From positions 124,001-188,000 of the IMG/VR virus record IMGVR_UViG_3300034117_001582: a stretch of 64,000 nucleotides of DNA; one strand, 5' to 3'. The translations under genes and the position numbers were made by a program. Shown piece by piece: positions 30,799 through 63,300 of the stretch (positions within the stretch are counted from its first letter, which is position 1; each line of letters opens with the position of its first letter). Under the pieces are notes generated by a model. It was not told the origin of the DNA, did no database searches, and saw nothing but the letters and a program-made list of their open reading frames with translations.

Positions 30799-31509
30799 TT
30801 ATTTACCTAAATAATCGGATAATCTTCTCATTAAGTCAACAGATTTATCCATACCTGAACCTAAAACTTCAATATTATTATTTTCTTCTAATTTTTCTTC
30901 ATACGTTGGTCTATCTTCTTTATTCAAATAAAGATAAGCTCCAGGTGTTGATGGTGATGACACTAAGTCAAAACAAATTAATTCAAAATCCCCCTGTACT
31001 TCATTTTGTTCTCCTTGTTTAACCAAAGAACCAACACCACGAGAAGAAACCCCCATTGTGACACCTTGTCTCATAAGGTTTGCTGCAACATCACCCTTAG
31101 ACGTTACAATCCCTCTTTCGTGGAAACCTGGACTTGTTAGTAATTTGACTTTACCCATTAGAACATTACCTTCCCACCACATGTCCGTGATAAGGTGTGC
31201 TACTCGATCTAAATCAATCAAGGAAGATTCAGGGTGATTTAATTCTGATATAGACATACCACGTTTAATAACTTCTTGGTATTTTTCAGCTTCTCTTTTT
31301 AATATTTTTTCAGGGTAAACTCTACCATTTCTATTTGGAACTCCATACTTCTGTAAGGTTGCATAAAATACAAACGGTTTAGAGTGTTCTAATTGTCCAT
31401 AAGATTCTTTAATAACATCTGAATTTCTTACTTCATTTGGGTTGATGATTCCAGCATCCCACTCAACTAATATTCCTTTACCAGTATCATTTGGTCCTAA
31501 TATTCTCAT
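30799..31509 (-). CDS. prohead protease (T4 gp21-like)
   Basis: NRNGRVYP, ELNHP, GVSSRGVGS, DLVSSPSTPGA. Confidence 0.92.
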   Translation of the reverse strand: MRILGPNDTGKGILVEWDAGIINPNEVRNSDVIKESYGQLEHSKPFVFYATLQKYGVPNRNGRVYPEKILKREAEKYQEVIKRGMSISELNHPESSLIDLDRVAHLITDMWWEGNVLMGKVKLLTSPGFHERGIVTSKGDVAANLMRQGVTMGVSSRGVGSLVKQGEQNEVQGDFELICFDLVSSPSTPGAYLYLNKEDRPTYEEKLEENNNIEVLGSGMDKSVDLMRRLSDYLGK

Positions 31510-41089: not shown

Positions 41090-43135
41090 ATGATAGATTC
41101 GGCGGACGGAACAGAAAAACCAAAAAACAAAAACCAAGACGGTTCAGGAAAAACACCAGTTTTAGATAACTTTTCAAGGGATTTAATTAAATTGGCGGAA
41201 GAAGGGAAATTAGATCCGGTTATTGGTCGTGAGGATGAAATAAATAGAATAGCTCAAATACTTTCAAGACGCAAGAAAAATAACCCAATTATTTTAGGTG
41301 AACCTGGTTGTGGTAAAACTGCAATTGTGGAAGGGTTGGCTAAGAAGATTTTTGAAGGTGATTGCCCACAAAATTTAGCAAATAAAAGAATTGTTTCTTT
41401 GGATATGACCTCAATTGTTGCGGGGACAAAATATCGCGGTCAATTTGAGGAAAGAATGAAAGTAATAATTGAAGAATTATACGCAAACCCTGATATCATT
41501 ATTTTCATAGATGAAATCCATACAATGATTGGTGCAGGTAATTCATCAGGATCTATGGATGCGTCAAACATATTCAAACCAGCACTTTCTCGTGGTGAAT
41601 TACAATGTATTGGAGCGACAACATTAGAAGAATATAGAAAGAACATTGAAAAGGACGGAGCATTAGAAAGACGTTTCCAAAAAGTGATTGTGGACCCATC
41701 AACAAAAGAAGAAACATTAATAATATTACAAAACTCAAAAGATAGGTACGAAAAACACCACAAAGTATCCTACAGTGATGATATTTTAAAACTATGTGTT
41801 GAGTTGGCGGATAGATATATTACCGATCGCGAATTCCCTGATAAAGCATTTGATATTATTGATGAGGTTGGTGCTCGTTCGCAGGTGGAAATTAAACTAC
41901 CTGAAATTATTGAGGATTTAAAAAAACAAGCACAACTAATTAAAGAAGAAAAGTTGGATGTGATTAACAAACAAAAATATGAGGAGGCTGCAAATCTTCG
42001 TGACAAAGAAAGAAAAATATTAGCCTATTTGGCAAAAGAAAAAGAAAACTTTGAAAATAATAGAGACCAAAATAAAAGGGTAGTAACCGAAGATGTTGTT
42101 TATGATGTTGTTTCGTTAATGACAAAAATACCAATTAACAAAATTACAAGCGATGAAACACAACAATTAATCACATTAAAAGAAACTTTATCGACTAAAG
42201 TTATTGGTCAAGAGGACGCGGTAGCAAAAATATCAAGATCTATCCAAAGAAATAAAGTAGGATTAAGTGACCCTAAAAAACCAATTTTTAGTGGTTTATT
42301 AATTGGTAATTCAGGTGTTGGTAAAACGGAATTAGCAAAACAATTGGCAAAACATATGTTTAATAGTGAAGATGCACTTATCAGATTAGATATGAGTGAA
42401 TTTTCAGATAAAATTGCGACATCAAAATTAACAGGTACCTCACCAGGTTATGTTGGATATGAAGATGGTTCACCATTCTTAAACAAAATTAAAAATAAAC
42501 CTTATTCAGTTATTCTTTTAGATGAGATTGAAAAGGCTCACCCTGAAATCTTTAACGTATTTTTACAAATGTTAGATGAAGGGTTTTTAACTGATGGTCA
42601 CGGAAGAAAAATCAACTTTAAAAATTGTATTATATTAATGACTTCTAATGTTGGTACTAGAGTCGTACAAGATTTTGGTACTGGCGTTGGTTTTACCACA
42701 AGTACAAAAATTGAAAGACGTGAGGATGAAATAAAATCAGTTTTAGAAAAAGAATTATTTAAAAAGTTTGCACCTGAATTTATAAATAGGTTTGATGACA
42801 TTGTATATTTCAAAGACTTAAACGAAGAAGACTTATTAAAAATTGTTGATTTGGAACTTAACAAATTCTATGAGAGAATTGGTCAATTAGAGTTTCAAGT
42901 TGAGGTTGACGATACTTTGAAAAAACACTTAACTGAAGTTGGTACTGACACTAGATTTGGGTCTCGTATTCTAAAACGTACCGTTCAAAAGTGGGTGGAT
43001 GATGCAATTACGGAAAAGATTTTAACTGATAATCCAGAAAAGGGATCAACTTTTATTCTAACATACAATGAAAAGGATAAAAAGACTGACGTTAAAATAA
43101 AAAAACCAACAAAAAGAAAAACAAAATCACAATAA
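41090..43135 (+). CDS. clpC: ClpC-like AAA+ ATPase lacking N-terminal Clp repeats
   Basis: GEPGCGKT/FIDEIH, UVR-type M domain, GNSGVGKT/LLDEIEKAH, GYVG pore loop, VGF ClpP-docking loop. Confidence 0.88.
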   Translation: MIDSADGTEKPKNKNQDGSGKTPVLDNFSRDLIKLAEEGKLDPVIGREDEINRIAQILSRRKKNNPIILGEPGCGKTAIVEGLAKKIFEGDCPQNLANKRIVSLDMTSIVAGTKYRGQFEERMKVIIEELYANPDIIIFIDEIHTMIGAGNSSGSMDASNIFKPALSRGELQCIGATTLEEYRKNIEKDGALERRFQKVIVDPSTKEETLIILQNSKDRYEKHHKVSYSDDILKLCVELADRYITDREFPDKAFDIIDEVGARSQVEIKLPEIIEDLKKQAQLIKEEKLDVINKQKYEEAANLRDKERKILAYLAKEKENFENNRDQNKRVVTEDVVYDVVSLMTKIPINKITSDETQQLITLKETLSTKVIGQEDAVAKISRSIQRNKVGLSDPKKPIFSGLLIGNSGVGKTELAKQLAKHMFNSEDALIRLDMSEFSDKIATSKLTGTSPGYVGYEDGSPFLNKIKNKPYSVILLDEIEKAHPEIFNVFLQMLDEGFLTDGHGRKINFKNCIILMTSNVGTRVVQDFGTGVGFTTSTKIERREDEIKSVLEKELFKKFAPEFINRFDDIVYFKDLNEEDLLKIVDLELNKFYERIGQLEFQVEVDDTLKKHLTEVGTDTRFGSRILKRTVQKWVDDAITEKILTDNPEKGSTFILTYNEKDKKTDVKIKKPTKRKTKSQ

Positions 43136-43161
43136 AATTTTTTAATTGTTAAAAAGTTTCT

Positions 43162-43169
43162 TATCTTTG
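43162..43169 (+). promoter_or_regulatory. Bacteroidota sigmaA -7 element
   Basis: TATCTTTG matches TAnnTTTG, 15 nt before ATG at 43185. Confidence 0.6.
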
Positions 43170-43184
43170 TAGAAATATTATAAA

Positions 43185-44219
43185 ATGAATATAGATAAAT
43201 TTAAGGAACTTCTTTCAGTGCCGTCAAAGACATATCAAGAAGAAGATATGGTTGAGCACATCTGCAACGAGTTAGACTCGATTGAGGGTGTTATGTATTA
43301 TCGAGACGAGATGATGAATGTCTACGCAACTAAAGGTGTGTTAGAGGAAGGTGAATACTACCCTATGTTCATTGCACATACAGATACCGTACACACAAAG
43401 ATTGATAAAATTGTTGTTAAAGAAGAAAAACTTAAACGACCAAATACCTTTGGAAAAACTTTTGATGATACCTTAGTTGATGTTTTAAAGGCATATGATG
43501 AAGAAGGGAACCCAACAGGTATTGGTGGTGACGATAAATGTGGGATTTTTATTTGTTTAGAATTACTTAAACAATTAGACAAAGTAAAAGTTGGTTTGTT
43601 TGTGTCTGAAGAAACGGGTTGTCACGGATCATCAAAATGTGATGAGAGTTTTTTAACAGATGTTGGTTATATTACCCAGTATGACGCCCCTGGTAATCAC
43701 CTAATTTCCGAGATTTGCTCGGGAGTTCGTTTGTTTGAAAGAGATAGTGAATTCTTTGAAAAAAGTATTTCAGTAATCGAAGCAGCATTTGGAAATGAAA
43801 TGTTAGTTCAATCACACCCATATACTGATGTATCACAATTAAAGAAAAAGATTGACGTTTCTTGCATCAACATGTCTTGTGGTTACTACAACATGCACAC
43901 AAAAGAAGAATTCATTTCAATTGATGATGTTGAACGTGCAATTGAGGCAGGAAAAAATATGGTTTTTATCTTGGGATTAAATAAACACCAATACGAATAC
44001 AAACCAATTGTTTATACTAATAAAACAATTATGAATTCTTTAGTGGAGGAAGATTTTGATGAGGATATTATCCATCAGTTAGAAACTATCGATGTTGAGG
44101 AAAATAAAGATGGTATCACCATTATTGATCCGTTTGATGGGAATGCTATGTTTATCAATGATGATGATTTGGTTTACTTATATGATATCATTAAAGAAAG
44201 ATTACTTAAAAAATATTAA
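43185..44219 (+). CDS. M20/M28-type zinc peptidase/hydrolase
   Basis: AHTDTVH, GGDDKCG, SEETGC, YD, NMHT..E. Confidence 0.8.
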   Translation: MNIDKFKELLSVPSKTYQEEDMVEHICNELDSIEGVMYYRDEMMNVYATKGVLEEGEYYPMFIAHTDTVHTKIDKIVVKEEKLKRPNTFGKTFDDTLVDVLKAYDEEGNPTGIGGDDKCGIFICLELLKQLDKVKVGLFVSEETGCHGSSKCDESFLTDVGYITQYDAPGNHLISEICSGVRLFERDSEFFEKSISVIEAAFGNEMLVQSHPYTDVSQLKKKIDVSCINMSCGYYNMHTKEEFISIDDVERAIEAGKNMVFILGLNKHQYEYKPIVYTNKTIMNSLVEEDFDEDIIHQLETIDVEENKDGITIIDPFDGNAMFINDDDLVYLYDIIKERLLKKY

Positions 44220-45364
44220 TCCGTTCTATAATCCATTGGGTCAAATAGACTCTCGTTGTATACCATATTTAGAATATCATCAATATACGATTCACCATAT
44301 TTTACGTTGTACGTTTTTGAGTCCCTAAGTGCATATTTGACTTTAAGCGTTTCTTTATCAACGGATTTAATCAATAATGTGACGTTACTATTTGGGACTT
44401 TAACGTATTTATCAAAACCAACCGTTGTGTTAATCTTATCAATTACTGAAAAATACTTTTCTAATGTTCCTTCATTATAGTCCTCAAGTACCCTATCTTT
44501 AAAACTTTCTAAATCGTTATCTACATTGTGGTCAAACGATCCATGAAATGCTTCATCGTCCCAAACATTATATTGTATTTCATAATATTCAGGTAAGTGT
44601 GATATCCGTTCTTTTGATATTGCCAAAAATAATAAATCAAGAAGACTATCACCTTCAGTACCAAAACGTGGATATAACATAATGGCATCTCCCCAATGTA
44701 ATTTATATTTCCAAAAACAATGTCTTTCAGAATAATTTTCAATACCAACAGGAGACAAACAATTACAATATGCGTCTTCAATGTATTTTTCAATACCACC
44801 CTCAACCGCAGCCACTTCAGCATCTACATACGACATTGTTATATCATCAGATATTCTAGTATCTACTTGGTCTAAAAATGAGCCTACCCTATCCACACCG
44901 TCACCACCAAACACCTGTAATTTACCATCCGGGCGCTTATTAAAAGCAGTTAAAAGTCCTGGTTGAACTATTTTTGCAACATCATAAATAATTTGTAAAT
45001 GATCCGATGTTAATGCTTCAACAATAACACCCTCTCTCCAATCATCGTAGGATCTATCATCAAAATCCCAAGTCCAACTTCTTCTATACATAGAATCATA
45101 ATATCCGGCCTCGTAATAAGAATCACTACCTTCTTCACCATACTCTTCAGGAAAAAAGAATCTCAAATATTCTTCTAACCCATCAAACGTAAACATTAAA
45201 CCGTCTTGTTCTACAGTAATAACGTCACTAAAATCATTACCTTCAGAATTAAAAAACTCTACGTCGTAAGGACTGATTTTTTTTTTATTAAGTGCAAGAA
45301 TTTTTTGAAAGTCATTTAACTCTTCTTCTTCCTCTTGTTCAAAAATCCTTAAAATTTTTTTCAT
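44216..45364 (-). CDS. acidic hypothetical protein
   Basis: start MKKILRIFEQ at 45364, next to TATTTATA (45370-45377); the longer ORF would overlap the tmRNA. Confidence 0.7.
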   Translation of the reverse strand: MKKILRIFEQEEEEELNDFQKILALNKKKISPYDVEFFNSEGNDFSDVITVEQDGLMFTFDGLEEYLRFFFPEEYGEEGSDSYYEAGYYDSMYRRSWTWDFDDRSYDDWREGVIVEALTSDHLQIIYDVAKIVQPGLLTAFNKRPDGKLQVFGGDGVDRVGSFLDQVDTRISDDITMSYVDAEVAAVEGGIEKYIEDAYCNCLSPVGIENYSERHCFWKYKLHWGDAIMLYPRFGTEGDSLLDLLFLAISKERISHLPEYYEIQYNVWDDEAFHGSFDHNVDNDLESFKDRVLEDYNEGTLEKYFSVIDKINTTVGFDKYVKVPNSNVTLLIKSVDKETLKVKYALRDSKTYNVKYGESYIDDILNMVYNESLFDPMDYRTD

Positions 45365-45429
45365 ATATTTATAAATATATTGTTTAATAGAAAGAATTAT
45401 CTTATCTTTACAATAGTTCTTTGATATAT

Positions 45430-45849
45430 GGGGGTGTTTTTGGATTTGACAGGTATTGGCTGAAGACAAAGGGCACGTGGGGACTGAATTAATCTCCTTA
45501 AAAACTGATTCATTTTTACAGACGGCAACGTTTTGAACAACCTTGAGACTTTGGGACTTATCTCAACTCAAGAAGTTACTGTAGCTTAATTTAAGCACGG
45601 TAACGGGGGGTCGGTCAGACATATAACCTAGCAACAGAAGTCGTTGACGAGTTGGTTTTCACTCTAAAAGAAAACAGCGGTCTCGTTCAGAGGTCTACCG
45701 TAATAAAAGTGAACTCGACACAGTTATTGGTGACAATGTCAAAATAGGAACCAAATATTTCGGAAGGTATGACAAACCTTGACCTAAACGTGTAGTCCTT
45801 ATCTGACAGGATAGACTGGACCGGAGTTCGAAACTCCGCACCTCCACCA
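45430..45849 (+). ncRNA. ssrA: tmRNA; predicted tag (A)GNVLNNLETLGLISTQEVTVA at 45524-45589
   Basis: GGGGGTG/CACCTCC-ACCA acceptor stem with G3:U, GGATTTGAC D-loop region, T arm CGGAG-TTCGAAA-CTCCG, pk1 at 45479-45512 followed by open tag frame. Confidence 0.93.
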
Positions 45850-45852
45850 TTT

Positions 45853-45880
45853 AAACCTCATCTTAGGATGGGGTTTTTTT
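45853..45880 (+). terminator. terminator after tmRNA
   Basis: AAACCTCATC-TTAG-GATGGGGTTTTTTT. Confidence 0.8.
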
Positions 45881-45931
45881 ATGCACTATAATTATATTTT
45901 AGTGTTGTGTGAATATTATATTTTAGTGCAC

Positions 45932-45965
45932 AAAAAAACCCACCAAAAGGTAGGTTTTGTTTTTT
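45932..45965 (-). terminator. terminator for minus-strand genes
   Basis: AAAAAAACCCACC-AAAA-GGTAGGTTTT. Confidence 0.65.
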
Positions 45966-46812
45966 AAAGATTTCTTGTATTTTTTCGTATCGACTCTTGA
46001 ATCAATTTATCTAATTTGTGATTATTATATTCTTCAATCTTTAATGACTTTAAAACCGCTTCACCACCAGCACCAACAGCCTTTTCAACTGTGCTTGACA
46101 TCATTTTAACAACGGCAGGAGCTAAAAACTTATAAGATGCTGATAAGAATTTTTTAAAGTTTGAACCAACATTATCAAACTTTGATTTTTCATCCGGAGT
46201 CACCTTTGGGCCATAAAGTTTATGACAATATCTAAAAACTTTATTTTCATCTTTAGACATGACCCTTGCAATATCCTTTTGTGCTTTAAGGTCCTTATCT
46301 TTCATTTGGGATTGGTAACCCTTAAGTCTTACCTCAAAACTTTTCCATATTTCACCACAATTTTGTTTAATTTTTTCTGTTAGGCCTTCAGGTGTCGGTG
46401 TGGTGGTTGTAGTTCCGGTCGGAGGTGTCGCACCAGTCGGAGTTGTAGTTCCGGTTGGTGGTGTAGTTCCGGTTGGTGGTGTAGTTCCTGTTGGTGTTGG
46501 TGTAGTTCCTGTTGGTGTTGGTGTGGTTCCTGTTGGTGTTGGTTGACCTTCTGCCGTTGCAGGAGCTGCAGTCGATTTGGTAAATAATTTATTTATTGCT
46601 TCTATACCCTTTGGATTTGTTTGTGTTTTCCAATTATTGGTACCTTTAGTTGCGTACTCAACTTTATCTCCGGTTTTTCTATATTGGTAAGAGTCTCCAT
46701 TACCACCTTGTACAACTTCTTGCTCTACTAAATACAACCTTTTAGTTGCATTTTCATGCAAATTAATAATTCTATTTTTTTCCTCTTGGGATAATTCAAA
46801 TAAATTTTTCAT
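45964..46812 (-). CDS. putative head-internal protein with PTGTT linker
   Basis: leader ELSQEEKNRIINLHE...LVEQ; Pro/Thr/Gly repeats at ~46390-46545. Confidence 0.6.
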   Translation of the reverse strand: MKNLFELSQEEKNRIINLHENATKRLYLVEQEVVQGGNGDSYQYRKTGDKVEYATKGTNNWKTQTNPKGIEAINKLFTKSTAAPATAEGQPTPTGTTPTPTGTTPTPTGTTPPTGTTPPTGTTTPTGATPPTGTTTTTPTPEGLTEKIKQNCGEIWKSFEVRLKGYQSQMKDKDLKAQKDIARVMSKDENKVFRYCHKLYGPKVTPDEKSKFDNVGSNFKKFLSASYKFLAPAVVKMMSSTVEKAVGAGGEAVLKSLKIEEYNNHKLDKLIQESIRKNTRNL

Positions 46813-46819
46813 GCGTTTT

Positions 46820-47974
46820 TTAATAATAAATACTTTTATATTTTAATTTTTTCTTTGTTGTGTAAAAATAGTTTTCATTTGTTGTTTGCCCTGTGGTCGT
46901 AACTTGTGTTTCAGTTTGCCCTGTGGTCGTAACTTGTGTTTCAGATTGACTAATTGCCTCAAGTTCTGTTTGTGCTTGTTGAATCGCATCTTTACCTTTT
47001 GACATATCTGCTTTTAATTTTTTCTTTGCCCAAGAATCCCCTTGAGAAATTAATTTGTTAACGTTTGCAAATTTTTCAATCGCTTTTGGTAAAAACTTTT
47101 TTACGATATCGTATATTTTTGGCATTTTTTTAATTGATTCTACTGCCTGTGAAATTCCAGACGACATAATGTTTTTAAGCGGTTGTAAAAATTTCGTAAG
47201 ATAACCATTAGATAATAACGCAAAAATATCAATCAATAACAACATCCAACTACCCTTTCCACTTATGGCCATATAAGCATCATATATGGTTAAAGCTCCC
47301 CACGCTACCGTAGTGGCAATTGCTCCTATACCTGTAAAACTTAAAAATTTTTGTACAAGGGCACCCATAGGACTATTTAATGCGTTTCTTAAACCTGCAA
47401 AAAACTTATCAAACCCCGTTTTTTTTATTTTTTCGGCAACTTGGTCATCAGATAAAGTTTGTTGTGTTACTGACTGTCCACCATTAAATGGTATTTTTTT
47501 TTCAATCTCTTTAGATAGTTCACCTTCAGCACCGTACCATTGTTCAGTATTTTTTAATCTCCACGCATATTTTTTTTCTCCACTTTCAAAATATAATTTA
47601 AAGTCGTATTGTGGATTTGTTTTTATATCAATTTGTTCTGTTTTTTGGGTTTCTGATTGTTCTAAAATAAAATTTTTAAAATTTTTAAATTGTGAGTCGG
47701 TAAATATTTTGATATTTTCTTCATTTTCTAAAATGAGGTTATTTAAGTTTTTTTTACTATACTCCAAAATCTTTTTCTTTGGGTATCCAATAGATTTTAA
47801 ATTATCCTCTATTAGTTTTTGAACGTATTTTTTTTGTTCGTATTTACCTTTTATAAAACAACCAAAAGTTGCATCACAAATTCTTTTTTGAAATTCTAAC
47901 GACTCATTTATTGATGAAGTATTTAATTTTTTTGATAACTCTTTTAATTGGTTGTCCGTTAAAATAATTTTCAT
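46820..47974 (-). CDS. putative head-internal/ejection protein with hydrophobic hairpin
   Basis: leader IILTDNQLKE..INES; hydrophobic stretch TGIGAIATTVAWGAL...MLLLIDIFALL; exact 30-bp duplication at 46884-46943. Confidence 0.6.
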   Translation of the reverse strand: MKIILTDNQLKELSKKLNTSSINESLEFQKRICDATFGCFIKGKYEQKKYVQKLIEDNLKSIGYPKKKILEYSKKNLNNLILENEENIKIFTDSQFKNFKNFILEQSETQKTEQIDIKTNPQYDFKLYFESGEKKYAWRLKNTEQWYGAEGELSKEIEKKIPFNGGQSVTQQTLSDDQVAEKIKKTGFDKFFAGLRNALNSPMGALVQKFLSFTGIGAIATTVAWGALTIYDAYMAISGKGSWMLLLIDIFALLSNGYLTKFLQPLKNIMSSGISQAVESIKKMPKIYDIVKKFLPKAIEKFANVNKLISQGDSWAKKKLKADMSKGKDAIQQAQTELEAISQSETQVTTTGQTETQVTTTGQTTNENYFYTTKKKLKYKSIYY

Positions 47975-48002
47975 TAATTTTTTTTTTATTTATATAAATA
48001 TC

Positions 48003-48186
48003 CGTATATTTGTAATTATACAAACATTCCTTCCATATTCAGATTTTAGAAAATCTTGATAACAAACGATTAGGTAAAAAACTTGTTGATGATTATAAGA
48101 TATTTTGGAAGGTATGACAAGCCTTGACCTAAACGTGTAGTCCTTATCTGACAGGCTGGACAGGATCGGAGTTCAAATCTCCACCA
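48003..48186 (+). pseudogene. chimeric remnant: 5' end of the glycosylase gene fused to the 3' end of tmRNA
   Basis: 48003-48100 resembles 48582-48690 (ATG changed to ATA, ~11-nt deletion); 48100-48186 resembles 45755-45849 with 34 nt identical. Confidence 0.9.
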
Positions 48187-48194
48187 TTTAAAAA

Positions 48195-48225
48195 CAAAAA
48201 CCCCTCTTTTGGAGGGGTTTGTTTT
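48195..48225. terminator. intrinsic terminator, likely bidirectional
   Basis: AAAACCCCTC-TTTTG-GAGGGGTTT. Confidence 0.75.
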
Positions 48226-48226
48226 A

Positions 48227-48514
48227 TTACCATTTAGGGCATTGCAATAATTTGGATTTAAATATAGGGCTTTTTGCACTATGTTTTTGTAACATTCTTT
48301 TTAATTTACGTAAATTTCTACCTTTAAATTTACGGATGTTATCACCAAGTTTGTCGATTAATCTTTTTAAACCGTTTGCATCATTTTCATCCACATCATC
48401 AAGTTCATCGTCTACTTCCATTTCAATGTCCCCTGAAATTTCTTCTTGTTCTCTAATCACTCGTCTAACGATGCGAGATAAATCAGACTCTGTTAATCTT
48501 ACAATTCTGTTCAT
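48227..48514 (-). CDS. small protein with VRLTESDL.RIV.RVI.EQ leader
   Basis: 95 aa; TATTTATA at 48552-48559. Confidence 0.7.
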   Translation of the reverse strand: MNRIVRLTESDLSRIVRRVIREQEEISGDIEMEVDDELDDVDENDANGLKRLIDKLGDNIRKFKGRNLRKLKRMLQKHSAKSPIFKSKLLQCPKW

Positions 48515-48583
48515 AATTTTTTTTTAATTTTTTTTATTTATTATCTTTCCATATAAATATATCGTACTTTAAAAAAAGATTCG

Positions 48584-48591
48584 TATATTTG
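48584..48591 (+). promoter_or_regulatory. Bacteroidota sigmaA -7 element
   Basis: TATATTTG 5 nt before ATG; second copy at 48005-48012. Confidence 0.6.
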
Positions 48592-48596
48592 TAATT

Positions 48597-49103
48597 ATGC
48601 AAACATTTCTTCCATACTCAGATTTTAGAAAATCTTTAGAATCTCTTGATAACAAACGATTAGGTAAACAACGCGTTGAGGCTTATCAGATAATTTCAGC
48701 AATTACGGGTCGACCAAAAAAGAACGGACAACCTTATAAAGGGTGGATATCTCACCCATGTTCGGTAATGTGGAAAGACTATGTGAATGCGCTTAAACTA
48801 TACTACAACGATTGTATTGATGTGTGGGTGTCTCGTGGTTTTAAAAACACAATGCAACATGAACACATTGAAGGTGAGTTTGTTTTACCTCATTGGTTGG
48901 GTGATGAAGAGTTTCATTCATCACATAGATCTAATCTATTACGTAAGGATTTTGATTATTATACAAAACACGGGTGGTTAGATAACCCTGACGACCCATA
49001 CGTGTGGATGGATAATCAAGGATTGTGGTACAAACAAATTGCTGGTACTAAAGAAAGGATTTATTATAAACCAAATATTATATTAGAATCCGTTGGTTGT
49101 TGA
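48597..49103 (+). CDS. pyrimidine-dimer DNA glycosylase/EndoV-like (MSMEG_6728 family)
   Basis: MQTFLPY..F..S...LD.KRLGKQRVE..QI, HP...MW, SHRSNLLRKD. Confidence 0.85.
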   Translation: MQTFLPYSDFRKSLESLDNKRLGKQRVEAYQIISAITGRPKKNGQPYKGWISHPCSVMWKDYVNALKLYYNDCIDVWVSRGFKNTMQHEHIEGEFVLPHWLGDEEFHSSHRSNLLRKDFDYYTKHGWLDNPDDPYVWMDNQGLWYKQIAGTKERIYYKPNIILESVGC

Positions 49104-57307: not shown

Positions 57308-60300
57308 TTAAATTTCTACCCAACTATTATCAGGATTAAAATAAATTGTTTCATTAGTCCCATCCAAACTATAACCAATTATTCTTATTATATCACCACT
57401 TCCTGAAGGTGCCGTTGTTGTTATACCTCCTGCGGTTGTTGAAACATATAAAATATCACCTGTGGTTGTTGTGAATCCTGAATTTCTAATATATCCGTTT
57501 ATTAACATACCACTCGTCGTTCCCGTACCTAACGCAAATGCTAACATTCCTGTGGAGCCTGATGCAAAATCCGCATCTGCCGCAACCCAAGCCCCTGAAC
57601 TATTATAGTAATATAGATTACCCGCAGTTAATGACCCCGTACCAAAAGTCACAATATCACCATAACCTGAAACTGAAGATGTTAATCCTGTTACGGGGTT
57701 ATGTATGAATTGGTAATCACCTCTAACATCTATTTTTCTTGATGGAGATGCGGTACCAATACCAACATTTGTTCCATCATCAAAAATAGTACTTGTGCTT
57801 GATAATGTTGATGTTGTTTGCCATTTAACGGCATAATTGGCTGTTCCTGATCCTACAAAAGAAGTTCCAGAAGTACCGTTAGTTCCGCTTGTACCATTTG
57901 TACCGTTGGTTCCTGATGTTCCATTCGTACCATTTGTACCTGACGTGCCATTTGTTCCTGAAGTTCCATTGGTTCCCGATGTTCCGTTTAATCCATTGTA
58001 AACCCACGATATTGTATAGGTCTGAGCCGAAAAAGAACCATTTCCAACAACATTGGTTAAATCAAATTGGTATACAGATCCCGAAACTGAAATACCGTTT
58101 ACAGCCCAAATACCAATAATATTATTACTACCAACTTTAGTCACTTGTAAATAAACAGTATTTCCTGATGATTGTATTGAATCAATTGCCGAAAACCAAG
58201 CCGAGTAATTAACACTGTTAATGTCGGTGGTATTAATGTAAATAATGGTTGTTGCTGATATTGTTGCGGAATCACTATTAAACTTTGTTTCGATAGGGCC
58301 ACCACCTAGTTTCCAGAAATCCCATCTACCTGAGTTTGACCCGTCATTACCATAAATCCCACTAGTTCCGTTAGTTCCATTCGTACCACTTGTTCCTCTT
58401 GTGCCTGAAGTGCCGTTGGTCCCTGAAGACCCATTAGTTCCTGATGTACCATTAGTTCCTGAAGTACCATTAGTTCCTGATGTACCATTAGTTCCTGAAG
58501 TACCATTAGTACCATTTAGTCCATTAAAGACCCACGAAACAGTATACGTAGCCTGATCGGTTAAAGCCCCTGAACCAGTGACAAAACTAAGCCCTATATC
58601 CCAATATGTGGTATTATCCGTCATACCTGTTATATCATAGATTCCAATTACACTATTATTACCTAATTCTGTTATTTGTAGATAACCTTTATTACCCGCC
58701 GATTTTAAAACGGCACAGGCATCAAACCAATCGTAATAATCTATTGTATTAATATCTACAACATTAATAGAAATATATGAAATTGTTGATATTATTTGTG
58801 TGTCAGGAACAAAGTATGTCGAAACAGGACTTCCAGGTACAGTTCCTTCATTATACCATCTTCCACTATTTGAACCATCATTACCCACTTTTCCAGTATT
58901 TCCATTATTTCCTGAAGTTCCATCAGTTCCTGAAGTTCCATCAGTTCCTGAAGTTCCTGCCTGTGCCATTAATGCCCAATTACCACTAAATGGAGGAGTT
59001 GGTATCCCCGTATTACCATTTATTAATGAAATATAAGAACTACCGGCAAATTGAACGACATCATTTATATTGTAAGTGGACATTAAGTTCCATGAACCTT
59101 GCCAATTAAATGAAATGCCACTAGTTCCGTTAGTACCTGATGTTCCGTTAGTACCTGATGTTCCATTTGTTCCATTAGTACCGTTAGTTCCTGAAGTACC
59201 ATTAGTCCCCGAAGTTCCATTTGTACCATTAGTACCATTAGTACCTGAGGTTCCATTTGTACCATTAGTACCTGAAGTTCCATTCGTTCCGCTTGTACCA
59301 TTAGTTCCATTCGTTCCGCTTGTACCATTAGTTCCATTCGTTCCAGATGTTCCTGAAGTTCCATTTGTCCCACTTGATCCATTAGTTCCATTCGTACCTG
59401 AAGTTCCATTTGTACCCGAAGTTCCATTTGTACCATTTGTTCCCGAAGTCCCGTTTGTTCCTGATGTTCCGTTTGTACCATTCGTTCCTGAAGTACCTGA
59501 TGTTCCATTGGTCCCTGAAGTTCCGTTTGTACCAGAAGTCCCATTTGTACCGTTCATTCCTGAAGTCCCATTAGTACCATTGGTTCCTGAAGTACCATTT
59601 GTTCCGCTAGTGCCATTTGTCCCTGAGGTACCATTCGTTCCACTAGTTCCGTTTGTCCCGTTCGTTCCACTTGTTCCGTTAGTTCCAGATGTCCCATTTG
59701 TTCCGTTAGTTCCACTAGTGCCGTTGGTACCATTTGTACCATTAGTTCCTGAAGTCCCATTAGTACCGCTAGTTCCATTTGTACCATTTGTTCCTGATGT
59801 TCCATTTGTGCCGTTAGTTCCGCTCGTACCATTTGTCCCACTTGTACCGTTGGTACCATTCGTTCCTGAAGTTCCATTTGTTCCGCTAGTCCCGTTTGTT
59901 CCCGATGTTCCATTTGTACCGTTAGTTCCTGAAGTACCATTTGTTCCGCTCGTACCATTAGTCCCTGAAGTACCGTTGGTTCCATTTGTGCCGTTTGTCC
60001 CTGAAGTCCCGTTAGTACCGTTCGTTCCCGAAGTTCCATTTGTTCCATTAGTTCCTGATGTGCCGTTTGTTCCTGAAGTTCCATTAGTCCCTGATGTTCC
60101 ATTAGTACCGTTAGTTCCGTTAGTACCAGATGTTCCATTCGTTCCTGAGGTTCCATTTGTTCCATTAGTACCATTCGTTCCTGAAGTTCCATTAGTACCA
60201 TTCGTACCGCTAGTGCCATTTGTGCCGCTAGTTCCATTAGTCCCCGACGTACCATTTGTTCCATTGGTACCTGATGTTCCATTGGTACCGCTAGTTCCAT

Positions 60301-63300
60301 TCGTGCCGTTTGTTCCCGACGTTCCATTAGTACCGTTCGTCCCTGAAGTTCCGTTTGTACCATTCGTTCCTGAAGTTCCGTTGGTACCTGAAGTTCCATT
60401 CGTACCGTTGGTACCACTTGAACCATTTGTTCCCGAAGTTCCATTAGTCCCGTTAGTCCCATTAGTACCTGAAGTTCCGTTTGTACCTGAAGTTCCGTTT
60501 GTACCATTAGTACCCGATGTTCCATTTGTTCCTGAAGTTCCATTTGTACCTGAAGTCCCGTTAGTACCTGAGGTTCCATTGGTGCCTGATGTTCCGTTAG
60601 TACCTGAAGTCCCATTTGTTCCATTTGTACCTGAGGTGCCGTTTGTTCCTGAAGTCCCGTTTGTTCCGTTAGTTCCACTTGTACCATTCGTACCTGAAGT
60701 CCCATTAGTTCCTGAAGTTCCGTTTGTACCATTAGTACCTGATGTACCATTAGTTCCTGAAGTTCCGTTTGTACCACTAGTACCTGATGTACCATTAGTT
60801 CCAGATGTTCCGTTCGTACCATTTGTACCTGATGTTCCGTTAGTACCTGACGTACCATTAGTACCTGAAGTTCCGTTTGTACCTGATGTACCATCAGTCC
60901 CATCAACACCAGAAAGTCCACTAGATCCATTCGTACCATTCGTTCCAGATGTGCCATTTGTACCCGAAGTTCCATTTGTACCATTTGTTCCCGAAGTCCC
61001 GTTTGTTCCTGAAGTTCCGTTGGTACCATTAGTCCCGTTTGTTCCCGATGTACCATTTGTGCCGCTAGTACCGTTTGTTCCATTTGTGCCGCTAGTACCA
61101 TTCGTACCGTTGGTTCCATTTGTCCCTGATGTACCATTTGCTCCACTTGTACCATTTGTACCTGAAGTTCCATTTGTTCCATTTGTGCCTGACGTTCCGT
61201 TTGTACCGTTTGTCCCCGAAGTTCCATTTGCTCCGCTAGTTCCATTAGTCCCGTTGGTACCACTTGAACCATTTGTACCTGAAGTTCCATTTGTTCCGTT
61301 AGTCCCTGATGTGCCATTTGTTCCCGAAGTTCCATTAGTACCGTTGGTTCCATTCGTCCCATTTGTTCCTGATGTTCCATTTGTTCCGTTTGTACCTGAA
61401 GTACCATTTGTACCTGAAGTTCCATTTGTACCTGAAGTTCCGGCAGATGTTAATAAATTTGTACCGACACCCGCAGCACATGCGGTTATGTCAAGAAACG
61501 CACCTCTTGCAGTACCACCTTGTTCAAAAAACCTAATTCTATCTTGCCATATGTCAAAAGTGACCCCTGTACCTGAAATGGTAGTGTTAGTTACAGGTTT
61601 GTTTAATAGGATTTCCCCACCTTCATCACCAGCCTGATACAATACACTTAATTTTGTACCATCAAATGTTAAAAGAGATTCGGCAACTATTCCTCCTGAT
61701 CCGTTTGACGTTAAAACTTGATTATCTGAACCTGGTACTGCAGGTGATGATCCACTTGTTCCGTTTGTTCCGCTCGTACCATTAGTGCCTGAAGTTCCAT
61801 TTGTTCCGTTTGTACCTGAAGTTCCATTAGTTCCTGACGATCCATTTGTACCATTTGTTCCTGAAGTTCCGTTGGTCCCGCTCGTACCATTTGTACCATT
61901 TGTACCTGAAGTTCCATTAGTTCCGTTAGTTCCGCTAGTACCATTAGTACCGCTAGTACCATTCGTACCTGATGTTCCGTTTGTCCCATTTGTTCCCGAA
62001 GTTCCATTTGTACCTGAAGTCCCGTTCGTACCATTTGTTCCTGATGTTCCATTAGTCCCTGATGTTCCGTTTGTTCCATTAGTCCCTGAAGTTCCATTCG
62101 TTCCATTAGTTCCGCTAGTCCCATTTGTACCTGAAGTCCCGTTGGTTCCATTAGTACCATTCGTCCCTGAAGTGCCATTTGTGCCGCTAGATCCATTAGT
62201 CCCAGAAGTTCCGCTAGTACCGTTAGTGCCTGAAGTACCATCTGTACCTGATGTTCCCGCAATAAATGGTGATAATGAAGTGGTTACCTGAGCAATTGTT
62301 GCATCTTCAAAATAACAAGTCATTGTTTTTGCACCTAATGAGGTTGCATAGAACTTAACGACTATTCTATCACTAATATTTACCGTTGTTGCGGGTACAG
62401 GTACAGAAAATAAATAAAGCTCCACAAGCGTACCGTCGCTAATGGGGTGGGGTGCCGCACTATTTGATCCAATTAAAGTTTCAGTACCACCTGTTGTTCT
62501 AATATATATATCAGCATATAATTTTGGAGTACCACCATTGGAGCTCATACTAACGTAATTCTCAAAGTTCCAGTTTCCTGCGGGTATTGTGGTTATTCCT
62601 GGATCACCAATAATTGTTGAAAATGAACCTATTAGTTGTGTTCCAGCACCTGTTGCCGTTAATGTTGTTCCGGCACCTATCACTATGTTTCTATCCATTA
62701 CATAGTAAGTTGGAATTGTAGATGCGGATGAAGGGTTAAAATAATAAACTAAACCTGTTGAAAATCCATTCACCCCTGAAGTTCCATTAGTACCGCTGGT
62801 TCCGTTCGTTCCATTTGTACCTGATGTTCCATTGGTCCCTGATGTTCCATTCGTCCCGTTTGTTCCCGATGTACCATTCGTTCCGTTAGTACCTGAGGTT
62901 CCATTCGTTCCGCTAGTTCCATTTGTTCCTGAAGTCCCATTTGTACCATTTGTTCCGTTTGTTCCACTAGTCCCATCTGTTCCGTTAGTCCCCGATGTTC
63001 CGTTGGTTCCATTAGTCCCGCTAGTACCATTGGTACCTGATGTTCCTGAAGTTCCATTTGTACCTGACGTTCCATTTGCACCATTTGTTCCCGAAGTCCC
63101 ATTTGTACCATTAGTCCCATTTGTACCATTAGTTCCTGATGTTCCATTAGTCCCCGATGTGCCATTTGTTCCATTAGTTCCTGATGTACCATTAGTACCG
63201 TTAGTTCCTGAAGTCCCGTTAGTTCCTGAAGTCCCGTTTGTGCCATTTGTTCCTGACGTTCCGTTAGTTCCACTTGTACCATTGGTACCTGATGTTCCGT

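What the first reader, a model, noticed from the sequence alone, without database searches (positions are those of the whole stretch)
45755..48690. Fossil tandem duplication between tmRNA 3' end and glycosylase 5' end forms a gene-capture locus
Seen: the unit [tmRNA 3' end, terminator, minus-strand leader-bearing gene(s), TATTTATA/TATATTTG divergent promoters, glycosylase 5' end] occurs twice. The junction at ~48100 joins the glycosylase start to the tmRNA tail through ATA(A)TTT-like microhomology. The cargo differs between units (45964-47974 versus 48227-48514). This resembles attL/attR at a tmRNA, but no integrase is present. Inference: a recombination hotspot where late-expressed cassettes are gained and lost.
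Basis: partly seen in the sequence, partly recalled or inferred. Interest (0 to 1): 0.65.

Follow-up and report, generated by a model that had tools for sequence, protein, structure and literature searches.

The report
Recombination scar in phage cassette hotspot
In an uncultured 292-kb jumbo phage, two alternative versions of a variable gene slot between its tmRNA gene and a DNA-repair glycosylase gene were joined head to tail by an old illegitimate recombination. This left a dead glycosylase start fused to a dead tmRNA tail, a real but fairly ordinary footprint of how large phages swap accessory genes.

Summary
The tmRNA 3' end (45755-45837) recurs at 48100-48182 at 90% identity. The promoter plus glycosylase 5' end (48568-48696) recurs at 47989-48106 at about 81-88% identity. 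The inner copies are dead and directly abutted.

The same junction occurs in six other independent assemblies that differ by 4-11% in sequence, so it is real, fixed and old.

In about 40 related phage contigs the left block (ClpB, M42 peptidase, orf382, tmRNA) is constant. The tmRNA-to-glycosylase interval ranges from 57 bp to 4.65 kb, with about 24 gene arrangements.

Both parental arrangements exist as separate genomes: tmRNA-A1-A2-glycosylase (L103, L100, L095) and tmRNA-B-like-glycosylase (L106-L108). The window is these two stacked by illegitimate recombination at a short microhomology. Comparable stacking scars occur in L004, L006 and L028, and L024 differs from L025 by one repeat-flanked cassette.

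No integrase is present in the genome, so an att-site reading is rejected.

In relatives, Seg-like GIY-YIG or HNH homing endonuclease genes sit at the tmRNA 3' end, which gives a plausible but unproven source of breaks. "Late expression" rests only on a shared upstream motif. Cargo functions remain unknown.

This is a new member of a known kind: hyperplastic-region shuffling or segmental duplication.

The parts
45430..45849 (+). Intact phage tmRNA gene. Its last 95 nt (45755-45849) are repeat copy 1.
   Evidence: Rfam RF00023, 95 bits, full length 1-374. The acceptor stem with a G3.U pair and the CCA end can be read directly. A conserved 21-codon tag frame ending VTVA is present in relatives.
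45856..45880 (+). Intrinsic terminator after the tmRNA (term1): a 7-bp stem followed by a T run.
   Evidence: Read from the sequence. The same hairpin follows the tmRNA in L004 and L006. A second copy of it marks the stacking joint in L004.
45932..45956 (-). Minus-strand terminator hairpin at the 3' end of cargo gene A1.
   Evidence: Read from the sequence. It is part of inverted repeat I3. In L004 the homologous hairpin serves the B gene.
45964..46812 (-). Cargo gene A1, 282 aa. It has an N-terminal helix motif (SQEEKNRIINLH) and a Thr/Pro-rich repeat linker. Function unknown.
   Evidence: ORF. No Pfam or PHROG match. It lies next to A2 in the hapA relatives L103, L100 and L095.
46820..47974 (-). 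Cargo gene A2, 384 aa, with a hydrophobic central region. Function unknown.
   Evidence: ORF. No family match. Homologues of 68-96% identity lie directly beside an intact glycosylase in L095-L105. More distant members of the same cluster are in L004, L010, L011 and L028.
47975..48017 (.). Intergenic region of unit 1 (hapA type, 43 nt). It carries TATTTATA on the minus strand (47993-48000) ahead of A2, and a TAnnTTTG box on the plus strand (48005-48012).
   Evidence: It is 100% conserved among the strains that carry the junction. It matches the A2-glycosylase intergenic region of L103 and L105 in length and sequence.
48018..48099 (+). Dead 5' fragment of the glycosylase gene: ATA start, 11-nt deletion, premature stop.
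   Evidence: Alignments. It diverges faster between strains (91.5-92.7% identity) than the live copy does (98-100%).
48100..48186 (+). Dead 3' fragment of the tmRNA, from position -94 to the CCA end, lacking 8 nt of the acceptor strand. The joint with the glycosylase fragment lies in the ATATTT string at 48100-48105.
   Evidence: Less decayed copies of the junction in L084 and L087 read ...TATCAGATATTTCGGAAGG. Identity between strains is 89-96%, against 98.9% for the live tmRNA 3' end.
48190..48225 (.). Bidirectional terminator hairpin (term2) serving gene B.
   Evidence: Read from the sequence. The same hairpin follows the extra tmRNA fragment in L006.
48227..48514 (-). Cargo gene B, 95 aa. 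It has the N-terminal leader MNRIVRLTESDLSRIVRRVIRE followed by an acidic and then a basic tail. Function unknown.
   Evidence: ORF. No family match. The leader family has at least 14 members in this genome. An 86%-identical homologue in L004 lies next to the tmRNA. A 58% homologue lies between an intact tmRNA and the glycosylase in L106-L108.
48515..48596 (.). Intergenic region of unit 2 (hapB type, 82 nt). It carries TATTTATA on the minus strand (48552-48559) ahead of B, and a TAnnTTTG box (48584-48591) 5 nt before the glycosylase ATG.
48597..49103 (+). Intact pyrimidine-dimer DNA glycosylase gene. Its first 100 nt are repeat copy 2.
   Evidence: Pfam PF03013, E 4.8e-20. 163 relatives were found in viral contigs.

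Best explanation
The slot between the phage tmRNA gene and the divergently promoted glycosylase gene is a hyperplastic accessory-gene region of a freshwater jumbo-phage lineage. Related phages carry alternative, self-contained arrangements of this slot. Each has its own terminator, one to several cargo genes, and its own intergenic promoter region.

In an ancestor of this phage, one illegitimate (unequal) recombination joined two copies of the locus, from co-infecting or sister genomes. One copy was hapA (tmRNA, term1, A1, A2, intergenic region, glycosylase), broken about 100 nt into the glycosylase. The other was hapB (tmRNA, term2, B, intergenic region, glycosylase), broken 94 nt before the tmRNA 3' end. 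The joint used a 4-7 nt ATA/TTTC microhomology.

The product keeps one intact tmRNA on the left and one intact glycosylase on the right, and carries both cargo sets. The two internal gene fragments have been decaying since.

Shown:
- the repeats and the junction;
- persistence of the junction in diverged strains;
- faster decay of the inner copies;
- hypervariability of the slot;
- both parental arrangements existing separately;
- comparable scars in other relatives;
- absence of an integrase.

Inferred:
- that the event was a single step between different arrangements;
- that double-strand breaks made by homing endonucleases that home to the tmRNA 3' end stimulate these events;
- that the cargo genes are late-expressed and possibly capsid-targeted proteins.
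For: Repeats and junction.

The same junction is present in L005, L084, L085, L087 and L088 (L086 holds only the right-hand part), at 89-100% identity. Inner copies evolve faster than the live copies, and the A2 promoter region is 100% conserved.

The left block is constant: the M42 peptidase start to tmRNA end distance is about 2.63-2.68 kb in the five loci checked. The tmRNA-to-glycosylase interval ranges from 57 to 4654 bp with more than 20 cargo protein clusters.

hapA exists alone. L103, L104 and L105 (A2 92% identical), L100-L102 (72%) and L095-L099 (68%) have A2 42-43 nt from an intact glycosylase. Their intergenic sequence matches unit 1 of the window, not unit 2.

hapB exists alone. 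L106-L108 have a full tmRNA, a B-like gene, then the glycosylase.

Independent stacking scars in relatives:
- L028 is an L020-type unit plus an L010-type unit that starts at +3 of the tmRNA end.
- L004 has a duplicated tmRNA terminator between B and a 630-aa gene.
- L006 has a 72-78 nt extra tmRNA tail.
- L024 and L025 are 99.3-99.9% identical but differ by one 0.8-0.9 kb cassette flanked by 65-nt repeats.

No PF00589 or PF00239 recombinase is found in the genome.

Seg-like GIY-YIG genes (phrog_314, E 1e-32; tblastn to Seg-like genes of T4-like phages down to E 8e-32) and HNH-type genes (phrog_3322, E 1e-19) sit right after the tmRNA in 11 of 30 relatives. In the GIY-YIG loci the encoded CCA end is replaced.

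Against: A microhomology of 4-7 nt is weak evidence in DNA of about 30% G+C.

The dead tmRNA tail belongs to the same allele group as the resident tmRNA. The second parent was therefore a very close relative, or the same genome, and a plain tandem duplication followed by cargo replacement cannot be excluded.

The phages that carry the junction have no endonuclease gene in this slot, and the window genome has no homologue of the relatives' tmRNA-slot endonuclease genes. The geometry is also awkward. A cut in the T-psi-C arm, at about -26 to -12, does not by itself explain second-unit start points at -94 (window) and about -77 (L006).

Clustering of breakpoints near the tmRNA end could simply reflect survival of the products with the shortest repeats.

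The hapB-only contigs carry a B homologue of only 58% identity. No reads could be examined.
Confidence: 0.78

Rival explanations
1. A true intragenomic tandem duplication of one unit (tmRNA tail, cargo, glycosylase start). The cargo, terminator and intergenic region of one unit were later replaced by homologous exchange with another arrangement.
For: The dead tmRNA tail is closest to the resident tmRNA allele (90-92% identity). Allelic replacement clearly happens here. L087 carries a different tmRNA allele and L084/L085 a different orf382 allele, yet all three have the same junction. SegB-type amplification makes identical tandem units (PMC13096335).
Against: It needs two events. The second would require crossovers confined to the 95-nt and roughly 125-nt repeats. 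Each unit carries a complete, cargo-specific intergenic region and terminator that match free-standing arrangements in other contigs, which a single stacking event explains directly.
Confidence: 0.18
2. Site-specific integration of a mobile element into the tmRNA 3' end, with the two tmRNA-tail copies acting as attL and attR, as in bacterial tmRNA islands.
For: There is a direct repeat of the tmRNA 3' end. tmRNA genes are classic integration sites (PMC12595487).
Against: No tyrosine or serine recombinase is present in the 292-kb genome. The inner tmRNA copy abuts a glycosylase gene fragment, which an att mechanism does not produce. The repeat is about 95 nt and decayed, not a short exact core. 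The stretch between the two tmRNA copies is collinear with a normal allele of the same phage locus.
Confidence: 0.02
3. Assembly artefact: a metagenome assembler chained two strain variants of the locus.
For: The record is a metagenome-assembled virus, and strain variants of this locus do coexist in nature.
Against: The same junction, the same 11-nt and 8-nt deletions and many substitutions occur in at least five further assemblies from different samples and sources (JGI, ENA), with 4-11% divergence. The joint has only about 7 nt of overlap.
Confidence: 0.02

Closest known systems
Hyperplastic regions of T4-like phages, shuffled through conserved promoter/terminator motifs (PeSLs; Comeau, Arbiol and Krisch 2014, PMC4122927)
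   Same: Variable accessory genes are packed between conserved core genes. Cassette boundaries fall at terminator hairpins and promoter sequences that recur elsewhere in the genome. Near-identical phages differ by single cassettes, as L024 and L025 do.
   Different: This is a different phage lineage, and the left border is a tmRNA gene. The recurring elements here are terminator hairpins, a TATTTAT(A/T) box and a 70-nt leader-coding sequence, not the PeSL early-promoter stem-loop. The window's joint is illegitimate, lying inside two genes, rather than motif-mediated.
SegB-driven inheritance and tandem amplification of the T4/T6 tRNA region (Brok-Volchanskaya 2008, PMC2330249; Chihara 2026, PMC13096335)
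   Same: A free-standing GIY-YIG endonuclease gene sits beside tRNA-like genes. Tandem units are joined through microhomology between a tRNA-gene end and a neighbouring gene, leaving a truncated gene copy at the joint. Relatives of this phage carry Seg-like genes at the tmRNA 3' end.
   Different: The genome with the scar has no endonuclease gene in the slot. The two units carry different cargo. The event is ancient and fixed rather than a reversible laboratory amplification. The target would be a tmRNA rather than a tRNA. No cleavage has been shown.
Integrase-borne genomic islands at bacterial tmRNA genes (e.g. Zhao 2025, PMC12595487)
   Same: There is a direct repeat of the tmRNA 3' end with foreign cargo between the copies.
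   Different: There is no integrase, no short exact core repeat, the host replicon is a phage, and the second repeat is made of the downstream gene.
T-even internal proteins with a conserved capsid-targeting sequence and diverse bodies (reviewed in PMC3012670)
   Same: A short conserved N-terminal leader is followed by unrelated bodies. The genes sit in variable loci. The genome has a T4 gp21-type prohead protease, and the leader ends in (I/L/V)-x-E, the T4 cleavage-site type.
   Different: The leader is unrelated in sequence and about twice as long. Packaging, cleavage and injection are untested. A1 and A2 carry other leader types.

Membership tests
tmRNA (Rfam RF00023) | Full-length match above the gathering score, with a tRNA-like acceptor and T arm, and a tag reading frame | tested here: met
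   45430-45849 scores 95 bits against a 47-bit cut-off, model positions 1-374. The G3.U pair and CCA end are read directly. The tag frame is conserved in about 25 relatives. The copy at 48100-48186 is only a 3' fragment without the acceptor strand and is not a member.
Pyrimidine-dimer DNA glycosylase (Pfam PF03013) | Domain match above the curated cut-off in an open frame | tested here: met
   48597-49103 scores 72.2 bits against a 23-bit cut-off. The copy at 48018-48099 is a broken 5' fragment.
Segmental duplication or allele stacking by illegitimate recombination | Head-to-tail repeat of both unit ends, with a novel joint linking the right end of unit 1 to the left end of unit 2 | tested here: met
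   The glycosylase +100 position is joined to tmRNA position -94 at 48099/48100.
Segmental duplication or allele stacking by illegitimate recombination | Short microhomology at the joint | tested here: inconclusive
   ATA/TTTC, 4-7 nt, is clearest in L084 and L087. This is too short to exceed chance in AT-rich DNA.
Segmental duplication or allele stacking by illegitimate recombination | Parental single-unit arrangements exist | tested here: met
   hapA is seen in L095-L105 and hapB in L106-L108.
Hyperplastic region (T4-like sense) | Conserved flanking core genes with variable content among relatives, including near-identical ones | tested here: met
   The interval ranges from 57 to 4654 bp across about 24 arrangements while the left block is constant. 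L024 and L025 are 99.3-99.9% identical apart from one cassette.
Hyperplastic region (T4-like sense) | Cassette borders at recurring promoter/terminator motifs | tested here: met
   Duplicated terminators are present in L004 and L028, a 65-nt promoter-like repeat and a 111-nt leader repeat in L024, and leader DNA repeats across the genome. The window's own joint is not at such a motif.
Integrase-mediated island at a tmRNA gene | Tyrosine or serine recombinase encoded in or near the element | tested here: not met
   No PF00589 or PF00239 match is found in the whole genome, while the control genomes were positive.
Integrase-mediated island at a tmRNA gene | Flanking repeats consist only of the tmRNA 3' core | tested here: not met
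   The inner tmRNA copy is fused to a glycosylase fragment, and there is a second repeat pair made of glycosylase sequence.
Homing-endonuclease-driven rearrangement (SegB-like) | Free-standing endonuclease gene at the site | tested here: not met
   There is none in the window's slot, and the genome has no homologue of the relatives' slot endonuclease genes. Such genes are present at the homologous site in 11 of 30 relatives. Two unrelated GIY-YIG genes lie elsewhere in the genome.
Homing-endonuclease-driven rearrangement (SegB-like) | Enzyme cleaves the endonuclease-free allele near the joint | not testable with these tools
   This needs a cleavage assay.
Capsid-targeted internal proteins (T4 type) | Conserved N-terminal leader ending in a prohead-protease site, with a gp21-type protease encoded | tested here: met
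   The leader HMM finds 14 ORFs at E of 2e-5 or better, nearly all ending in (I/L/V)-x-E. PF03420 scores 88.5 bits at window 30931-31350.
Capsid-targeted internal proteins (T4 type) | Protein present in virions and N-terminally processed | not testable with these tools
   This needs virion proteomics.

The most novel reading that the evidence does not exclude
In this jumbo-phage lineage the 3' end of the phage-encoded tmRNA is a homing site for Seg-like GIY-YIG and HNH endonucleases. Their breaks repeatedly stack and delete cassettes beside it. The cassettes encode leader-bearing proteins that a T4-type prohead protease processes and that are packaged and injected. On this reading the locus is a natural, fossilised 'genomic accordion' that diversifies an injected, possibly anti-defence, arsenal.
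Probability: 0.22. Interest if true: 0.65.

Novelty: new member of a known kind. Interest (0 to 1): 0.38.

Why it matters
It gives a clean natural example of how accessory genes accumulate in a large phage. Both parental arrangements and several independent parallels are in hand. Whole alternative alleles of a variable slot are stacked by unequal recombination and can later be lost again. It also flags a phage tmRNA gene as a recurrent border and a probable homing site, extending the tRNA-SegB picture to tmRNA. Finally, it points to a large, undescribed family of leader-bearing proteins that may be virion cargo. None of this overturns current views of phage genome plasticity.

Tried and rejected
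- ARAGORN found no tmRNA. Rfam did.
- BLASTN of the locus against 50,697 deposited phages gave only three weak glycosylase hits, so no annotated close relative is available.
- Pfam, PHROGs and the ESM Atlas gave no function for A1, A2 or B.
- A literature search for the leader motif found nothing relevant.
- Exact-pattern scans for the junction found only the L005 contig in viral contigs and nothing in metagenome contigs.
- The att-site/integrase reading is rejected, as is assembly artefact.
- A search for the donor lineage of the dead fragments by nucleotide similarity was inconclusive, because most of their differences are unique decay.
- A weak Rfam match over the dead tmRNA tail (rimP leader, 27.5 bits, E 0.58) was dismissed as chance.
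- Only genetic code 11 was used.

Full report
**Context.** The window is positions 124001-188000 of a 291,867-bp IMG/VR virus record. CheckV rates it 99% complete and it has about 30% G+C. It encodes a tail sheath and a T4 gp21-type prohead protease, so it is a jumbo myovirus-like phage. No deposited phage is close to it at the DNA level.

**The observation.** Rfam finds a full tmRNA at 45430-45849 (95 bits). ARAGORN does not find it. Pfam identifies 48597-49103 as a pyrimidine-dimer glycosylase. The repeat finder and a whole-genome self-BLAST show that the last roughly 95 nt of the tmRNA recur at 48100-48186, at 90% identity over 83 nt (E 2e-24). About 30 nt of promoter plus the first 100 nt of the glycosylase recur at 47989-48106, at 81-88% identity (E 1e-27).

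The inner copies touch at 48099/48100. The glycosylase fragment has ATA instead of ATG and an 11-nt deletion that creates a stop. The tmRNA fragment lacks 8 nt of the acceptor strand. Unit 1 carries two minus-strand genes, A1 (282 aa) and A2 (384 aa). Unit 2 carries one, B (95 aa).

**Is it real and old?** L005, from another metagenome, is 100% identical across 6 kb including both repeats. Contigs found through close homologues of B come from four further JGI and ENA samples and are 89-96% identical to the window. L084, L085, L087 and L088 contain the same joint with the same two deletions; L086 begins within the dead tmRNA tail, so it does not reach the joint. In these strains the dead glycosylase fragment still starts with ATG, and the joint reads ...TATCAGATATTTCGGAAGG. 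This shows the ATA/TTTC microhomology more clearly than the window does.

Between strains, the dead fragments are 89-96% identical. The corresponding live sequences are 98-100% identical, and the 43-nt promoter region of A2 is 100% identical. So the joint is a fixed fossil under relaxed constraint, not an assembly error.

**The locus in relatives.** A search with the glycosylase returned 80 viral contigs. In 37 of them the block ClpB-like ATPase, M42 peptidase, orf382 and tmRNA lies upstream, with near-constant spacing. The distance from the tmRNA end to the glycosylase ATG ranges from 57 bp (L016, L041) to 4654 bp (L024). About 24 different arrangements and more than 20 cargo protein clusters occur. 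They include:
- secreted proteins and lipoproteins;
- a rhomboid protease;
- minus-strand genes that share an N-terminal leader;
- in 11 of 30 loci, a free-standing endonuclease gene immediately after the tmRNA.

The endonuclease genes are of two kinds. One is a GIY-YIG/NUMOD3 gene (phrog_314, E 1e-32; 31-39% identical to Seg-like genes of T4-like phages, E down to 8e-32). The other is an HNH/EndoVII-type gene (phrog_3322, E 1e-19). In the GIY-YIG loci the encoded CCA end of the tmRNA is replaced by the insert. L011 keeps a footprint of that insert without the gene.

**Origin of the window's structure.** Homologues of A2 at 92%, 72% and 68% identity lie on contigs L103-L105, L100-L102 and L095-L099. 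There A2 is 42-43 nt from an intact glycosylase, followed by an A1-like gene, the tmRNA and orf381. The intergenic sequence of these contigs matches the window's unit 1 intergenic region, not that of unit 2. Their glycosylase has none of the decay changes of the dead fragment.

Conversely, L106-L108 carry a full tmRNA, then a B-like gene (58% identical), then the glycosylase. Both single-unit arrangements therefore exist in nature. The window equals hapA cut 100 nt into the glycosylase, joined to hapB cut 94 nt before the tmRNA end.

The simplest history is one unequal, illegitimate recombination between two copies of the locus that carried different cargo. A tandem duplication of one unit followed by cargo replacement needs an extra event and constrained crossovers. 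It cannot be excluded, because the dead tmRNA tail belongs to the same allele group as the live one.

**Parallel scars.**
- L028 is an L020-type unit (tmRNA, terminator, lipoprotein gene, partial intergenic region) followed by an L010-type unit that begins 3 nt after the tmRNA end, with a 30-nt terminator repeat.
- L004 belongs to the same roughly 92%-identity clade as the window but lacks A1, A2 and the joint. It has tmRNA, term1, B, a second exact copy of term1, a 630-aa relative of A2, then the glycosylase.
- L006 has a 72-78 nt extra tmRNA tail followed by the same term2 hairpin as the window.
- L024 and L025 are 99.3-99.9% identical but differ by one cassette flanked by 65-nt promoter-like repeats.
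- L087 has swapped its tmRNA allele, and L084/L085 their orf382 allele, while keeping the joint.

The second-unit start points lie at -94, about -77, +3 and +3 relative to the tmRNA end.

**Mechanism and its limits.** No tyrosine or serine recombinase is encoded anywhere in the genome, and one repeat pair is glycosylase sequence. The att-site model is therefore rejected.

Two known processes fit. One is shuffling of hyperplastic regions through recurring promoter/terminator motifs (PMC4122927). The other is break-stimulated unequal recombination near tRNA-like genes. T4 SegB recognises the T-psi-C stem-loop (PMC2330249) and drives tandem amplification with microhomology joints and a truncated gene at the joint (PMC13096335).

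Seg-like genes at the tmRNA end in relatives make endonuclease breaks an attractive driver. However, the junction-bearing phages have no such gene in the slot. A cut in the T arm does not by itself explain the -94 and -77 start points. Survival of short-repeat products could also produce the clustering. I rate endonuclease involvement in this particular event at roughly one in three.

**Cargo and expression.** A1, A2 and B have no family or structural assignment. B belongs to a family of at least 14 genes in this genome that share only a 22-24 residue leader ending in (I/L/V)-x-E. The leader is conserved at the DNA level at 75-86%. With a gp21-type protease present, this resembles the capsid-targeting sequences of T-even internal proteins (PMC3012670), but that is analogy only.

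All three cargo genes are preceded by TATTTAT(A/T). The motif lies upstream of 91 of 358 ORFs, against 34 in the reverse-orientation control, and those ORFs include the tail sheath and tube genes. The glycosylase instead has a TAnnTTTG box 5 nt before its ATG.

**Verdict.** The feature is real and well explained. It is a member of known kinds of phage genome plasticity. Its value lies in the unusually complete comparative record and in the leads it gives: tmRNA as a homing site, and the leader-bearing protein family.

Read-level tests could not be run. No step needed referral.

Noticed in passing
window 45430-45849 and the tmRNA genes of L004-L062: The phage tmRNA encodes an unusually long tag frame of 21 codons, GNVLNNLETLGLISTQEVTVA, ending VTVA. 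The frame is conserved, with conservative changes, in about 25 related phages. ARAGORN does not detect the gene. In L061 the tmRNA is only 213 nt, with an internal deletion that cuts the tag frame.
   Followed up: partly
window 41090-45849: A ClpB-like AAA+ ATPase (41090-43135), an M42/M20 peptidase (43185-44219), a 382-aa ORF (44216-45364, minus strand) and the tmRNA form a block conserved in 37 related contigs. This may be a phage-encoded protein-quality-control module. The ClpB/peptidase junction is a second variable slot: 49 nt here, and 0.7-2.4 kb in L009, L010 and L020.
   Followed up: partly
G000:C1 227000-240000, plus scattered sites (53276, 10071, 252722, 267518); window 48227-48514: At least 14 genes share only an N-terminal leader, M-[KA]-R-[IV]-[IV]-R-L-T-E-[SR]-D-L-x-R-I-V-[KR]-R-[VI]-[IL]-x-E, followed by unrelated bodies. 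Dozens more ORFs start with other recurrent helix motifs, such as MKIIITESQ..., ...SEEEKxxIxxMH... and ...LLEDIKRFKxM.... No literature or family match was found.
   Followed up: partly
window 30931-31350 (-): A T4 gp21-type prohead protease (PF03420, 88.5 bits). Its known site type, (L/I)-x-E, matches the end of the leaders above.
   Followed up: no
window 48584-48591 and 10 other ORF starts in the genome: A TAnnTTTG box lies 4-5 nt upstream of the ATG. This is the -7 element type of Bacteroidota promoters. It suggests leaderless mRNAs and a Bacteroidota host. The signal peptides and lipoprotein motifs of cargo genes in relatives fit that host.
   Followed up: no
window 57308-64000 (the ORF continues to genome position 190067): A 2919-aa minus-strand ORF made of hundreds of diverged internal repeats in a region of raised G+C (0.40-0.45). 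It is probably a fibre or other repetitive structural protein.
   Followed up: no
L084/L085 (orf382 region) and L087 (tmRNA): Strains that share the junction at 89-92% overall identity have had single neighbouring genes replaced by alleles only about 62-65% identical. This indicates frequent gene-sized homologous exchange with distant relatives.
   Followed up: partly
G000:C1 209272-209499 (+) and 254839-255084 (-): Two GIY-YIG domain genes lie elsewhere in the window's own genome. They are unrelated at the BLAST level to the endonuclease genes found in the tmRNA slot of relatives.
   Followed up: no
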